From Octopus sinensis (taxonomy: Eukaryota): a stretch of 28,627 nucleotides of DNA. This document shows positions 5,482 through 22,013 of the stretch, in pieces. The notes under the pieces are model-generated. The model made no database searches and was not told the origin of the DNA. It saw nothing but the letters and a program-made list of their open reading frames with translations. Each line of letters begins with the position of its first letter. The stretch's first letter is position 1. The position numbers were made by a program, and so were the translations under genes. Location of the stretch: the NCBI RefSeq assembly GCF_006345805.1, contig NW_021836749.1, positions 1-28,627 on the forward strand. Direction: 5' to 3'.

Positions 5482-5494
5482 AAGTGGAGGCGCG

Positions 5495-5549
5495 TGGCTT
5501 AGTGGTTAGGGTGTTGAACTCATGATCGTAAGGTTGTGGTTTCGATTCC
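5495..5549 (+). promoter_or_regulatory. Pol III type-2 internal promoter of the SINE head (A-box TGGCTTAGTGG 5495-5505; B-box-like GGTTTCGATTCC 5538-5549)
   Basis: Matches the TRGCNNARYGG A-box. The B-box carries one extra T relative to GGTTCGANNCC. Spacing is tRNA-like. Confidence 0.7.
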
Positions 5550-8500
5550 TGAACCGGGCGATGCGTTGTGTTCTTGAGCAAAACACTTCATTTTTCACGT
5601 TGTTCCAGTCCACTCAGCCGGCAAAAATGAGTAATCCTGCGATGGACCGGTGTGTGGTTTCGATTCCTGGACCGGGCGACGCGTTGTGTTCCTGAGCAAA
5701 ACACTTCATTTTTCACGTTGTTCCAGTCCACTCAGCCGGCAAAAATGAGTAATCCTGCGATGGACCGGTGTGTGGTTTCGATTCCTGGACCGGGTGATGC
5801 GTTGTGTTCTTGAGCAAAACACTTCATTTTTCACGTTGTTCCAGTCCACTCAGCCGGCAAAAATGAGTAATCCTGCGATGGACCGGTGTGTGGTTTCGAT
5901 TCCTGGACCGGGCGACGCGTTGTGTTCCTGAGCAAAACACTTCATTTTTCACGTTGTTCCAGTCCACTCAGCCGGCAAAAATGAGTAATCCTGCGATGGA
6001 CCGGTGTGTGGTTTCGATTCCTGGACCGGGCGACGCGTTGTGTTCCTGAGCAAAACACTTCATTTTTCACGTTGTTCCAGTCCACTCAGCCGGCAAAAAT
6101 GAGTAATCCTGCGATGGACCGGTGTGTGGTTTCGATTCCTGGACCGGGTGATGCGTTGTGTTCTTGAGCAAAACACTTCATTTTTCACGTTGTTCCAGTC
6201 CACTCAGCCGGCAAAAATGAGTAATCCTGCGATGGACCGGTGTGTAGTTTCGATTCCTAGACCGGGCGACGCGTTGTGTTCCTGAGCAAAACACTTCATT
6301 TTTCACGTTGTTCCAGTCCACTCAGCCGGCAAAAATGAGTAATCCTGCGATGGACCGGTGTGTGGTTTCGATTCCTGGACCGGGCGATGCGTTGTGTTCT
6401 TGAGCAAAACACTTCATTTTTCACGTTGTTCCAGTCCACTCAGCCGGCAAAAATGAGTAATCCTGCGATGGACCGGTGTGTGGTTTCGATTCCTGGACCG
6501 GGCGATGCGTTGTGTTCTTGAGCAAAACACTTCATTTTTCACGTTGTTCCAGTCCACTCAGCCGGCAAAAATGAGTAATCCTGCGATGGACCGGTGTGTA
6601 GTTTCGATTCCTGGACCGGGCGATGCGTTGTGTTCTTGAGCAAAACACTTCATTTTTCACGTTGTTCCAGTCCACTCAGCCGGCAAAAATGAGTAATCCT
6701 GCGATGGACCGGTGTGTAGTTTCGATTCCTGGACCGGGCGATGCGTTGTGTTCTTGAGCAAAACACTTCATTTTTCACGTTGTTCCAGTCCACTCAGCCG
6801 GCAAAAATGAGTAATCCTGCGATGGACCGGTGTGTAGTTTCGATTCCTGGACCGGGCGATGCGTTGTGTTCTTGAGCAAAACACTTCATTTTTCACGTTG
6901 TTCCAGTCCACTCAGCCGGCAAAAAATGAGTAATCCTGCGATGGACCGGTGTGTGGTTTCGATTCCTGGACCGGGCGATGCGTTGTGTTCTTGAGCAAAA
7001 CACTTCATTTTTCACGTTGTTCCAGTCCACTCAGCCGGCCAAAAATGAGTAATCCTGCGATGGACCGGTGTGTAGTTTCGATTCCTGGACCGGGCGCGAT
7101 GCGTTGTGTTCTTGAGCAAAACACTTCATTTTTCACGTTGTTCCAGTCCACTCAGCCGGCAAAAATGAGTAATCCTGCGATGGACCGGTGTGTAGTTTCG
7201 ATTCCTGGACCGGGCGATGCGTTGTGTTCTTGAGCAAAACACTTCATTTTTCACGTTGTTCCAGTCCACTCAGCCGGCAAAAATGAGTAATCCTGCGATG
7301 GACCGGTGTGTGGTTTCGATTCCTGGACGGGCGATGCGTTGTGTTCTTGAGCAAAACACTTCATTTTTCACGTTGTTCCAGTCCACTCAGCCGGCAAAAA
7401 TGAGTAATCCTGCGATGGACCGGTGTGTAGTTTCGATTCCTGGACCGGGCGTTGCGTTGTGTTCTTGAGCAAAACACTTCATTTTTCACGTTGTTCCAGT
7501 CCACTCAGCCGGCAAAAATGAGTAATCCTGCGATGGACCGGTGTGTAGTTTCGATTCCTGGACCGGGCGATGCGTTGTGTTCTTGAGCAAAACACTTCAT
7601 TTTTCACGTTGTTCCAGTCCACTCAGACGGCAAAAATGAGTAATCCTGCGATGGACCGGTGTGTAGTTTCGATTCCTGGACCGGGCGATGCGTTGTGTTC
7701 TTGAGCAAAACACTTCATTTTTCACGTTGTTCCAGTCCACTCAGCCGGCAAAAATGAGTAATCCTGCGATGGACCGGTGTGTGGTTTCGATTCCTGGACC
7801 GGGCGATGCGTTGTGTTCTTGAGCAAAACACTTCATTTTTCACGTTGTTCCAGTCCACTCAGCCGGCAAAAATGAGTAATCCTGCGATGGACCGGTGTGT
7901 AGTTTCGATTCCTGGACCGGGCGATGCGTTGTGTTCTTGAGCAAAACACTTCATTTTTCACGTTGTTCCAGTCCACTCAGCCGGCAAAAATGAGTAATCC
8001 TGCGATGGACCGGGTGTGGTTTCGATTCCTGGACCGGGCGATGCGTTGTGTTCTTGAGCAAAACACTTCATTTTCACGTTGTTCCAGTCCACTCAGCCGG
8101 CAAAAATGAGTAATCCTGCGATGGACCGGTGTGTAGTTTCGATTCCTGGACCGGGCGATGCGTTGTGTTCTTGAGCAAAACACTTCATTTTTCACGTTGT
8201 TCCAGTCCACTCAGCCGGCAAAAATGAGTAATCCTGCGATGGACCGGTGTGTGGTTTCGATTCCTGGACCGGGCGATGCGTGTGTTCTTGAGCAAAACAC
8301 TTCATTTTTCACGTTGTTCCAGTCCACTCATCGGCAAAAATGAGTAATCCTGCGATGGACCGGTGTGTAGTTTCGATTCCTGGACCGGGCGATGCGTTGT
8401 GTTCTTGAGCAAAACACTTCATTTTTCACGTTGTTCCAGTCCACTCAGCCGGCAAAAATGAGTAATCCTGCGATGGACCGGTGTGTGGTTTCGATTCCTG

Positions 8501-20500: not shown

Positions 20501-21910
20501 GTTTCGATTCCTGGACCGGGCGATGCGTTGTGTTCCTGAGCAAAACACTTCATTTTTCACGTTGTTCCAGTCCACTCAGCCGGCAAAAATGAGTAATCCT
20601 GCGATGGACCGGTGTGTGGTTTCGATTCCTGGACCGGGTGATGCGTTGTGTTCTTGAGCAAAACACTTCATTTTTCACGTTGTTCCAGTCCACTCAGCCG
20701 GCAAAAATGAGTAATCCTGCGATGGACCGGTGTGTAGTTTCGATTCCTGGACCGGGTGATGCGTTGTGTTCTTGAGCAAAACACTTCATTTTTCACGTTG
20801 TTCCAGTCCACTCAGCCGGCAAAAATGAGTAATCCTGCGATGGACCGGTGTGTGGTTTCGATTCCTGGACCGGGTGATGCGTTGTGTTCTTGAGCAAAAC
20901 ACTTCATTTTTCACGTTGTTCCAGTCCACTCAGCCGGCAAAAAGAGTAATCCTGCGATGGACCGGTGTGTAGTTTCGATTCCTGGACCGGGCGACGCGTT
21001 GTGTTCTGAGCAAAACACTTCATTTTTCACGTTGTTCCAGTCCACTCAGCCGGCAAAAATGAGTAATCCTGCGATGGACCGGTGTGTGGTTTCGATTCCT
21101 GGACGGGTGGTGATGATGCGTTGTGTTCTTGAGCAAAACACTTCATTTTTCACGTGTTCCAGTCCACTCAGCCGGCAAAAATGAGTAATCCTGCGATGGA
21201 CCGGTGTGTGGTTTCGATTCCTGGACCGGGTGATGCGTGTGTGTTCTTGAGCAAAACACTTCATTTTTCACGTTGTTCCAGTCCACTCAGCCGGCAAAAA
21301 TGAGTAATCCTGCGAGGGAGTGTGTGGTTTCGATTCCTGGACCGGGTGATGCGTTGTGTTCTTGAGCAAAACACTTCATTTTTCACGTTGTTCCAGTCCA
21401 CTCAGCCGGCAAAAATTAGTAATCCTGCGATGGACCGGTGTGTGGTTTCGATTCCTGGACCGGGTGATGCGTTGTGTTCTTGAGCAAAACACTTCATTTT
21501 TCACGTTGTTCCAGTCCACTCAGCCGGCAAAAATGAGTAATCCTGCGATGGACCGGTGTGTAGTTTCGATTCCTGGACCGGGTGATGCGTTGTGTTCTTG
21601 AGCAAAACACTTCATTTTTCACGTTGTTCCAGTCCACTCAGCCGGCAAAAATGAGTAATCCTGCGATGGACCGGTGTGTAGTTTCGATTCCTGGACCGGG
21701 CGATGCGTTGTGTTCTTGAGCAAAACACTTCATTTTTCACGTTGTTCCAGTCCACTCAGCCGGCAAAAATGAGTAATCCTGCGATGGACCGGTGTGTGGT
21801 TTCGATTCCTGGACCGGGCGACGCGTTGTGTTCCTGAGCCATGCTCTTCATTTTATACGTTGCTCCAGTCCACTCAGCTGGCAAAAATGAGTAATACTGC
21901 GACGGACCGG
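5535..21910 (+). repeat. 118-bp satellite array, about 139 monomers (length/118, not individually counted)
   Basis: The anchor gatggaccgg recurs at 5641, 5759 and 5877 (period 118). Consensus: tgtgtRgtttcgattcctggaccgggYgaYgcgttgtgttcYtgagcaaaacacttcatttttcacgttgttccagtccactcagccggcaaaaatgagtaatcctgcgatggaccgg. Confidence 0.98.
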
Positions 21911-22013
21911 CGTCATCTCTAGGTGGAGGATTTCTACGCCCCTGAAACCGGGGAACCGGCCCTTATGAGCTTGGCATGGCTCGAGAGGGAACATTTATCT
22001 ATTTAAAAAATTT

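What the first reader, a model, noticed from the sequence alone, without database searches (positions are those of the whole stretch)
5486..22013. A satellite born in place inside one SINE, with the parental head and tail still attached
Seen: the SINE head (5486-5534) runs seamlessly into monomer 1, and the last monomer runs seamlessly into a unique SINE-like tail (21911-22013). Between them a 118-bp internal segment is repeated about 139 times (~16.4 kb). The junction joins ...ggaccgg to tgtggtttcg with only GG(T) microhomology. Established: satellites derived from transposable elements are known. Inference: the complete birth site is preserved here (target duplication, head, array, tail), which makes it a clean natural record of a ~270-bp element growing about 60-fold.
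Basis: partly seen in the sequence, partly recalled or inferred. Interest (0 to 1): 0.8.

Follow-up and report, generated by a model that had tools for sequence, protein, structure and literature searches.

The report
SINE-derived tandem array behind a U6 retrocopy

Summary
Tandem Repeats Finder reports a 118-bp unit x 139.0 copies at 5535-21910. It is preceded by a unique 49-bp head with a perfect Pol III A box. It is followed by a divergent last unit and a unique 101-bp tail.

Three things change the picture.

1. A full-length U6 snRNA retro-pseudogene (5373-5483, Rfam 96 bits) abuts the head. The only convincing target-site duplication, TTATAAGCGTTT / TTATAAGCCTTT (5361-5372 / 22014-22025, local-shuffle P ~0.0008), brackets U6 + head + array + tail, not the SINE alone. 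The founder insert was most likely a U6-SINE chimeric retrocopy. Less likely, the SINE landed later in the tail of a U6 retrocopy.

2. The array shows variant domains, older variants at its edges and one internal block duplication. The private changes of the two end units lie only in their outer parts. This fits in-place growth by unequal exchange.

3. Homopolymer indels rise from 0 at the edges to about 2.3 nt per unit in the interior. This looks like unpolished long-read consensus, so the count of 139 is provisional.

Only one outside copy of the SINE was found, exonised in protein P0002. Whether the unit is arrayed elsewhere could not be tested. SINE-derived satellites of this architecture are already described in squamates and bivalves, so this is a new member of a known kind.

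The parts
5361..5372 (+). 5' copy of the target-site duplication, TTATAAGCGTTT. It ends exactly one base before U6 position +1.
   Evidence: with up to 1 mismatch, the only matches in the window are this site and 22014-22025 (expected 0.10); local-shuffle P = 0.0008.
5373..5483 (+). Full-length U6 snRNA retro-pseudogene. It has a 4-nt insertion (GGAT) in the conserved internal stem-loop region. It ends in TTT followed by AA rather than a T4-5 terminator. There is no TATA box at -30.
   Evidence: Rfam RF00026: 96.2 bits, E 5.6e-24, model positions 1-105 of 105. Upstream sequence read directly.
5484..5485 (+). The dinucleotide GT between U6 and the head. It is either filler or the true first bases of the SINE. 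The AA at 5482-5483 may also be untemplated.
   Evidence: Sequence read directly. Cannot be resolved without a SINE family consensus.
5486..5534 (+). Unique SINE head carrying a Pol III A box, TGGCTTAGTGG, at 5495-5505.
   Evidence: Single copy in the window. The A box matches TRGCNNAGTGG at 11/11 by inspection. Head-to-body contiguity is also seen in the external copy P0002, which aligns across 5523-5650.
5535..5652 (+). Unit 1 of the array. It has a B-box-like GTTTCGATTCC at 5539-5549 and one private change at unit position 18, in its outer part.
5653..21794 (+). Units 2-138 of the 118-bp array. About 98.5% identical at substitution level. Four main variant sites (unit positions 4, 25, 28, 40) form domains. 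Block m3-24 is repeated at m79-99, and m52-55 at m102-105.
21795..21912 (+). Unit 139, the parental-like terminal unit. It differs from the consensus at 13 positions. Two of them (C28, C40) are shared with a minority of array units. The 11 private ones all lie at positions 46 and beyond.
   Evidence: Comparison with P0002.
21913..22013 (+). Unique SINE tail, ending in the AT-rich ...ACATTTATCTATTTAAAAAATTT.
   Evidence: P0002 extends weakly (L-D-G versus L-E-M) into its first 10 nt.
22014..22025 (+). 3' copy of the target-site duplication, TTATAAGCCTTT (11/12 identical to the 5' copy).
5477..5483 (+). Candidate inner TSD, TATTTAA (its partner is at 22000-22006). It is relevant only to the nested-insertion rival, and this copy lies inside the U6 3' end.
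   Evidence: 5 matches in the window against 3.3 expected; chance P 0.023-0.058.
22000..22006 (+). Partner of the candidate inner TSD, TATTTAA.

Best explanation
This is a single retroposed insert, most likely a U6 snRNA-SINE chimeric retrocopy made by a LINE reverse transcriptase. Within it, a 118-bp internal SINE segment later became tandemly duplicated and expanded in place to roughly 139 copies (about 16.4 kb). That segment runs from 4 nt upstream of the B box to the end of the body.

Steps that are shown:
1. One 12-bp TSD pair encloses U6 + head + array + tail.
2. U6 is full length, in the same orientation, lacks a TATA box at -30, and is damaged by an insertion.
3. Head, tail and a divergent last unit are each present once.
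4. The array has variant domains, minority ancestral variants enriched at its edges, a long-range block duplication and short dimer-like stretches.

Steps that are inferred:
1. The reverse transcriptase copied a full-length SINE RNA, then switched template to the 3' end of U6. The 1-4 ambiguous bases at the joint (AA and/or GT) would be untemplated additions.
2. A first duplication arose by an illegitimate join with at most 1 nt of microhomology.
3. Unequal sister-chromatid or homologue exchange and conversion then amplified and homogenised the units. Only the outer part of unit 1 (up to about position 18) and the outer part of unit 139 (from position 46) escaped.

No cellular function is implied. 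The element is a young, private tandem array, a 'SINE-derived satellite' in the sense of Vassetzky et al. 2023. Every unit carries a T5 run, which would stop Pol III, so the locus cannot be a source of full-length SINE RNA.
For: - Array: TRF 118 bp x 139.0; unit-by-unit fit.
- U6: Rfam 96 bits, full model length.
- Outer TSD: unique in the window at up to 1 mismatch, expected 0.10; local-shuffle P 0.0008.
- Head and tail are single copy, and unit 139 is 88.8% identical to unit 1.
- C28/C40 are shared between unit 139 and units 2, 4, 5, 7, 54, 80-83, 104-106 and 119-132. The private differences of unit 1 lie at position 18 and those of unit 139 at positions 46 and beyond.
- Block m79-90 matches m3-14 best, with 5 substitutions against a median of 22.
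- The external SINE copy in P0002 spans body plus head. It agrees with the array at unit positions 46-51 and 61-62, and with unit 139 at positions 85 and 102. Both lineages have therefore diverged from a shared parent.
- Precedents: TSD1-(SINE)n-TSD1 arrays with a complete first head and a complete last tail in a bivalve (PMC11481361). sSats with terminal SINE-end units in squamates (PMC10702118). U6 fused to the Mon-1 SINE with TSDs in platypus (PMC4476161).
Against: - No genome of the source species could be searched, so it is unknown whether the same 118-bp unit is arrayed at other loci or whether head and tail match one family consensus.
- Only one outside copy was found, and only at peptide level.
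- A 7-bp direct repeat, TATTTAA, sits where a SINE-only TSD would be. This leaves a two-step origin open.
- The interior of the array carries homopolymer indels typical of unpolished long-read consensus, and one 22-unit block recurs. The copy number could therefore be wrong.
- The head does not score as tRNA with Rfam or ARAGORN.
Confidence: 0.65

Rival explanations
1. Nested, two-step origin of the 5' part. A U6 retro-pseudogene with a short A-rich tail (...CCATATTTAAAAAATTT) was inserted first, with the 12-bp TSD. A SINE then inserted into that tail, making its own 7-bp TSD, TATTTAA. The array then grew in place as in the main explanation.
For: - TATTTAA occurs at 5477-5483, 2 nt before the head, and at 22000-22006, 7 nt before the outer TSD.
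- Removing the SINE and one repeat copy leaves a plausible U6 + A6 tail.
- A-rich tails are favoured retroelement targets (general knowledge).
- Doucet et al. name this alternative explicitly for tripartite structures (PMC4476161).
Against: - A 7-mer match in this AT-rich context is expected by chance in about 2-6% of trials.
- It needs a SINE to land within about 10 bp of a U6 retrocopy end, which is rare a priori.
- It leaves the SINE with no A-rich or simple-repeat tail (it would end ...ACATTTATC).
- U6-poly(A) copies are reported to be rare where stringent LINEs dominate (PMC4476161).
Confidence: 0.25
2. This is not the birth site. The 118-bp satellite, or a SINE variant already carrying two or more internal units, exists at several loci, and this copy arrived already duplicated. 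Only the later growth happened here.
For: - In squamates the same sSat, with SINE-end terminal units, is found at many loci per genome (PMC10702118).
- There is a sharp step between unit 138 (consensus-like) and unit 139 (13 differences).
Against: - Each unit contains a T5 run that would terminate a Pol III transcript, so multi-unit RNAs are unlikely to be retroposed (sequence; inference).
- The junction pattern was absent from every collection that could be scanned, but those collections hold essentially no cephalopod DNA, so this says little.
- C28/C40 are shared between unit 139 and the array, and both have the same 2-nt length state at the T run relative to P0002. This ties array and terminal unit to one parent copy.
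Confidence: 0.15
3. Assembly artefact or over-expansion. The true array is much shorter, and long-read mis-assembly inflated it.
For: - Indels rise from 0 per unit at the edges to about 2.3 nt per unit in the interior. They cluster in homopolymers (T5, A5, A4), which shows the interior was not polished.
- Block m3-24 recurs at m79-99.
Against: - The variant pattern is not a simple loop. The recurring block lacks about 26 units relative to its partner and does not share the partner's private substitutions (m17, m18).
- The 3' third of the array is a distinct T25 domain seen nowhere else. At least several tens of distinct units must therefore exist.
Confidence: 0.1

Closest known systems
TSD1-(SINE)n-TSD1 tandem SINE arrays of the blood clam Scapharca (Anadara) broughtonii (PMC11481361)
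   Same: The first unit has a complete Pol III head but no tail. Internal units are truncated at both ends. The last unit has a complete tail. One TSD pair flanks the whole. The host is a mollusc.
   Different: The clam arrays have 4-15 units; this one has about 139. The founder here also carries a U6 retrocopy inside the TSDs. The SINE family is different and unnamed.
SINE-derived satellites (sSats) of squamate reptiles (Vassetzky, Kosushkin and Ryskov 2023, PMC10702118)
   Same: Tandem repeats of an internal SINE portion. Longer terminal units reach the SINE terminus, and a minor class has both termini. Arrays reach up to about 1000 units. Longer arrays are more homogeneous. Some stretches alternate in a dimer-like way.
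   Different: The sSats occur at many loci, often subtelomeric, and derive from the Squam1-3 families. Here only one locus is known, its chromosomal position is unknown, and the phylum is different.
U6 chimeric retrocopies (U6-L1 in placentals; U6-L2 and U6-Mon-1 SINE in platypus; Doucet et al. 2015, PMC4476161; Moldovan et al. 2019, PMC6789731)
   Same: A full-length U6 sits at the 5' end, fused in the same orientation to a retroelement, and the composite is flanked by one TSD pair.
   Different: The partner here is an apparently full-length SINE in a cephalopod-type genome. I know of no invertebrate example, though that is not a survey result. RNA ligation cannot be told apart from template switching here. 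A nested insertion is not excluded.
PcH-sat of the limpet Patella caerulea, derived from a Nin-SINE (PMC11121367)
   Same: A molluscan satellite whose unit contains a SINE segment.
   Different: PcH-sat is a genome-scale pericentromeric satellite (about 10% of the genome). Its birth locus is not preserved and its unit is 179 bp. The 118-bp figure in that paper is the length of the region of similarity, not of the unit.

Membership tests
SINE-derived satellite / tandem SINE array | Head-to-tail repeats of an internal portion of a SINE | tested here: met
   118 bp x 139. The unit starts 4 nt before the B box and ends at the body-tail border.
SINE-derived satellite / tandem SINE array | Terminal units continue into the SINE's own 5' and/or 3' terminus | tested here: met
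   Unique head 5486-5534 and unique tail 21913-22013.
SINE-derived satellite / tandem SINE array | The parental sequence is a dispersed, multi-copy SINE family | tested here: inconclusive
   No second copy in the window. One outside copy, exonised in P0002, covers body plus 12 nt of head. No genome of the source species was reachable.
SINE-derived satellite / tandem SINE array | Presence at multiple loci, satellite-like abundance, heterochromatic position | not testable with these tools
   The junction pattern is absent from the viral, metagenome and prokaryote collections, which hold essentially no cephalopod DNA.
tRNA-derived SINE (SINE2/tRNA) | Internal Pol III A and B boxes at tRNA-like spacing | tested here: met
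   By inspection. A box TGGCTTAGTGG, 11/11 match to TRGCNNAGTGG, at 5495-5505. B-box-like GTTTCGATTCC, one mismatch to GGTTCGANNCC, at 5539-5549. Gap between them 33 nt.
tRNA-derived SINE (SINE2/tRNA) | Recognisable similarity to a tRNA, or a cloverleaf fold | tested here: not met
   ARAGORN finds none. Relaxed ARAGORN gives only nonsense at 60% thresholds. The Rfam tRNA model gives no hit even at E<=10.
tRNA-derived SINE (SINE2/tRNA) | Flanking target-site duplication of its own | tested here: inconclusive
   Only the 7-mer TATTTAA (P 0.02-0.06). The significant 12-bp TSD encloses U6 as well.
U6 chimeric retrocopy (Group IV of Doucet et al. 2015) | Full-length U6 fused 5' to a non-LTR retroelement in the same orientation | tested here: met
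   U6 model positions 1-105 of 105 at 5373-5483, on the + strand, 2 nt from the SINE head.
U6 chimeric retrocopy (Group IV of Doucet et al. 2015) | One TSD pair flanking the composite | tested here: met
   TTATAAGCGTTT / TTATAAGCCTTT, directly abutting U6 +1 and the end of the tail.
U6 chimeric retrocopy (Group IV of Doucet et al. 2015) | Made in one event, meaning the partner has no separate TSD | tested here: inconclusive
   The candidate inner TSD TATTTAA cannot be excluded.
Functional U6 snRNA gene | Intact conserved core, a T4-5 terminator, and an upstream TATA at about -30 | tested here: not met
   There is a 4-nt insertion in the conserved region (alignment). The 3' end reads ATTTAAGT. 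There is no TATA at -30; TTATAAG lies at -12 to -6 and is part of the TSD.

The most novel reading that the evidence does not exclude
The seed duplication was made by the reverse transcriptase itself, not by DNA-level slippage. In the same multi-template retrotransposition event that appended U6, the enzyme would have jumped back on a SINE RNA, or onto a second one. That jump produced two or more copies of the 118-nt segment, which then served as the substrate for unequal exchange. In other words, a satellite seeded by LINE template jumping. Three observations are compatible with this: the near-absence of microhomology at the junction, the evidence for template switching at the U6 joint, and the sharp sequence step between unit 139 and the rest. 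None of them demonstrates it.
Probability: 0.12. Interest if true: 0.6.

Novelty: new member of a known kind. Interest (0 to 1): 0.35.

Why it matters
Loci that keep every layer of a transposon-to-satellite transition are uncommon and useful as teaching and calibration cases. Here those layers are the target-site duplication, the founder insert, both parental ends and the amplified core. This locus shows which parts of the terminal units escape homogenisation. It shows that large block duplications occur alongside local amplification. It also shows that a founder insert can itself be a chimeric U6-SINE retrocopy. If the source is an octopod, where SINEs make up about 11.6% of the O. vulgaris genome (PMC13282606), this extends SINE-derived satellites from squamates and bivalves to cephalopods. 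It does not reveal a new mechanism or a function.

Tried and rejected
**Collection scans**
- The prokaryote genome scan gave one hit, a chance match in an Atribacteria MAG with no tRNA or SINE context.

**Peptide route**
- An array-frame peptide gave no homologues.
- Exact look-ups of two window ORFs and of P0002 gave no contigs.
- A flank-repeat peptide hit only an Argonauta hians protein. Its 20-kb locus holds the flank repeat but not this SINE.
- The exhaustive representative search gave P0003 and P0004. P0003 translates an unrelated 55-nt tandem repeat whose DNA similarity to the SINE is no better than shuffles. P0004 is a bacterial repeat protein. Both were rejected as spurious.

**Literature and family naming**
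- Full-text searches for sequence strings returned only chance primer matches.
- From memory, the body (…TTGAGCAA.ACACTT…CTCCAGTCCAC.CAGC…AAATGAGTA) resembles a conserved SINE central domain seen in other molluscs. I could not test this and do not file the element under any named superfamily.

**Structure**
- tRNA ancestry of the head found no support.
- The single-stranded fold of the unit is unremarkable, z +0.94.
- There is no strict higher-order repeat period. The lag analysis shows only weak short-lag preference plus the lag-76 block.
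Full report

Yes. Tandem Repeats Finder reports one array at 5535-21910 with period 118, 139.0 copies, 96% matches, 2% indels and score 29882. I fitted every unit to the consensus one after another and obtained 139 units, the last at 21795-21912.

The 49 bases before the array (5486-5534) and the 101 bases after it (21913-22013) each occur once in the window. A reconstructed head + unit 139 + tail (268 bp) finds nothing else in the 12 kb of flanks. The growth factor is 16,528/268, about 62-fold.

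AgeI sites survive in 120 of 139 units and NaeI sites in 132 of 139.

**2.

An Rfam scan of the whole window gives a single hit above threshold. It is a full-length U6 spliceosomal RNA at 5373-5483 on the + strand: 96.2 bits against a gathering score of 44, E 5.6e-24, model positions 1-105 of 105 (repeated). It ends two bases before the head.

It looks like a retro-pseudogene for three reasons:
- It has a 4-nt insertion (GGAT) in the otherwise invariant region (alignment).
- It ends ...CCATATTT-AAGT instead of in a T4-5 terminator.
- There is no TATA box near -30 (sequence).

Immediately before U6 position +1 lies TTATAAGCGTTT (5361-5372). Immediately after the tail lies TTATAAGCCTTT (22014-22025). 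With up to one mismatch these are the only two matches in the whole window on either strand, against 0.10 expected. When only the local 46 bases are shuffled, a match that good appears in 0.08% of trials.

The unit bounded by target-site duplications is therefore U6 + head + array + tail.

A duplication bounding the SINE alone exists only as the 7-mer TATTTAA (5477-5483 and 22000-22006). Its 5' copy lies inside U6. The 7-mer occurs 5 times in the window against 3.3 expected. A shared 7-mer between these two short AT-rich stretches arises by chance in 2.3-5.8% of trials.

**3. Is it a SINE?**

Evidence for:
- The head has a perfect A box (TGGCTTAGTGG, 5495-5505).
- Each unit begins with a B-box-like GTTTCGATTCC, one mismatch to the consensus, 33 nt downstream of the A box in unit 1.
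- The size (268 bp) and the retroposed context fit a SINE.

Evidence lacking:
- Nothing recognises a tRNA. ARAGORN finds none, even when relaxed to 75% of its thresholds. The Rfam tRNA model gives no hit at E<=10. 'tRNA-derived' is therefore a motif-level statement only.

Outside evidence is thin because no genome of the source species could be reached:
- Junction and B-box patterns were absent from the viral, metagenome and prokaryote collections. The single hit was a chance match.
- A six-frame concatenated peptide query found one protein, P0002 (MetaClust, UniParc UPI00069532A9). It is a fibronectin-III protein whose last 45 or so residues are the antisense translation of this SINE.
- By tblastn, P0002 aligns to 5523-5650 (body plus 12 nt of head, 83-84% identity) and to 21795-21922 (unit 139 plus, weakly, 10 nt of tail).

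P0002 shows that head and body are natively contiguous in at least one other copy, and that the element is dispersed. Whether head and tail belong to one family remains largely untested.

**4. Source organism**

Another repeat in the flanks (4564-4759 and 23115-23332, in inverted orientation) translates to a peptide whose only database relative is a hypothetical protein of the octopod Argonauta hians, at 79% identity. The corresponding Argonauta DNA is 87.6% identical over 113 bp.

The window is therefore probably from an octopod cephalopod. This fits its extreme microsatellite load. The exact species is unknown.

**5. Anatomy of the array**

Substitution diversity is very low:
- Mean 1.8 differences per pair of units.
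- Private substitutions number 0.2-0.4 per unit.
- Four sites carry nearly all the variation: position 4 (G/A), position 25 (C/T), and the linked pair 28 and 40 (T/C).

The variant states form domains:

| Units | Composition |
|---|---|
| 1-7 | Mixed C28/C40 and T25 types |
| 8-53 | Position-4 variants only |
| 54-55 | C28/C40 and T25 types |
| 56-77 | Position-4 variants only |
| 78-83 | Mixed again |
| 84-103 | Position-4 variants only |
| 104-106 | C28/C40 types |
| 108-138 | A T25 domain with a dimer-like alternation around units 119-127 |

Two internal repeats stand out:
- Units 79-90 match units 3-14 far better than any other place: 5 substitutions, against 14 for the next best partner and a median of 22. 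The correspondence runs from m3-24 to m79-99 with one unit missing.
- Units m52-55 recur at m102-105.

The array thus grew by long-range block events as well as by local amplification.

Unit 139 differs from the consensus at 13 positions:
- Two of them (C28, C40) are shared with the minority array type and retain CpGs, so they are probably ancestral.
- The 11 private ones all lie at positions 46 and beyond.
- Unit 1 has a single private change, at position 18.

The outer portions of the two end units are therefore excluded from homogenisation. This is the pattern unequal exchange predicts.

Using P0002 as an outgroup:
- The array keeps the family state at positions 46-51 and 61-62.
- Unit 139 keeps it at position 102, and perhaps at position 85 (a CpG site).
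- Both lineages have thus changed since a common parent.
- Both also share a 2-nt longer T run than P0002.

The unit has no unusual single-strand fold, z +0.94.

**6. Assembly quality**

Indels are absent in units 1-11. They rise to about 2.3 nt per unit in units 41-122 and fall again towards the 3' edge. They concentrate in the T5, A5 and A4 runs and in the (TG)n at the junction.

This is the signature of long-read consensus that short reads could not polish, not of real divergence. The true units are probably over 99% identical, and the number 139 should be treated as provisional.

A gross artefact is unlikely. The variant domains are distinct, and the recurring block is not a simple loop.

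**7. Mechanism**

Most likely (inference), a LINE reverse transcriptase copied a SINE RNA to its 5' end and switched to the 3' end of U6 snRNA. This gave a U6-SINE chimera with one TSD pair.

This is the Group IV architecture of Doucet et al. It was described for U6-L1, and in platypus for U6-L2 and U6-Mon-1 SINE (PMC4476161). Prior RNA ligation by RtcB is an alternative route for U6 chimeras (PMC6789731, abstract).

The rival is two steps: a U6 retrocopy with an A-rich tail, later hit by the SINE, with the TATTTAA duplication. I weigh the one-event chimera at roughly 0.6 and the nested insertion at 0.25-0.3. My reasoning is that the inner repeat is only marginally beyond chance, while a SINE landing within 10 bp of a U6 end is rare a priori.

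Either way, the 118-bp segment was then duplicated by a join with at most 1 nt of microhomology and expanded in place. Because every unit holds a T5 run, multi-unit Pol III transcripts are unlikely. The length was therefore gained at the DNA level.

**8. Comparison with what is known**

- The architecture 'TSD - complete head - doubly truncated units - complete tail - TSD' is described for SINE arrays of 4-15 units in the clam S. broughtonii (PMC11481361).
- SINE-derived satellites with terminal SINE-end units, up to about 1000 units, occur at many loci in squamates (PMC10702118).
- A limpet pericentromeric satellite contains a Nin-SINE segment (PMC11121367).
- The recent O. vulgaris repeat annotation lists SINE classes 'U' and 'U-L1' but does not discuss such arrays (PMC13282606).

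This locus is therefore a new, well-preserved member of a known kind. Its extra feature is a U6-containing founder.

**9. Verdict**

- Observation: confirmed.
- Interpretation: partly supported. In-place growth inside one retroposed element is well supported. The boundaries and the duplication were misplaced. Single-locus origin and copy number are untested.
- Interest: moderate to low (0.35).

Noticed in passing
window 4564-4759 (+), 23115-23332 (-), 28458-28515: Copies of another dispersed repeat, 72-93% identical to each other. They flank the array in inverted orientation. The translation matches a hypothetical protein of the octopod Argonauta hians (79% aa identity; 87.6% DNA identity over 113 bp in L002 10040-10152). 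This is the only clue to the source organism.
   Followed up: partly
window 5535-21794, mainly units 12-122: Homopolymer and (TG)n indels rise from 0 at the array edges to about 2.3 nt per unit in the middle, while private substitutions stay rare. This looks like an unpolished long-read consensus. Unit lengths and the total count are provisional.
   Followed up: yes
window 78-701 and 684-1304: A direct, nearly adjacent duplication of about 620 bp at 81.5% identity. Each copy begins with a (TAA)n/(AAT)n microsatellite.
   Followed up: no
window 2151-2393 and 3963-4208: An inverted repeat pair, 247 bp at 91% identity, about 1.5 kb apart, with (TA)n, (ATAC)n and (AT)n tracts between the arms. It could be two copies of one element or the ends of a foldback-type element.
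   Followed up: no
window 22802-22942, 22974-23103, 23544-23655: Three copies, 74-79% identical, of a further short repeat clustered in the 3' flank.
   Followed up: no
window 23795-24279, 24461-24739, 25346-25844, 22061-22156: Very long microsatellites: (ATCT)122, (AC)141 and (TCT)168. A compound (GGT)n(GTC)n tract starts 36 bp after the 3' target-site duplication. The strong GC and AT skews at 24-26 kb come from these tracts.
   Followed up: no
window 28210-28429: A self-complementary stretch, 222 bp at 86%, made of (TTA)n facing (AAT)n.
   Followed up: no
P0003 (protein from the representative library): A 1300-aa 'protein' that is the three-frame translation of an unrelated 55-nt tandem repeat. 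It scored E 6e-11 against the SINE peptide, but its DNA similarity is no better than shuffles. It is a reminder that translated repeats give inflated E-values.
   Followed up: yes
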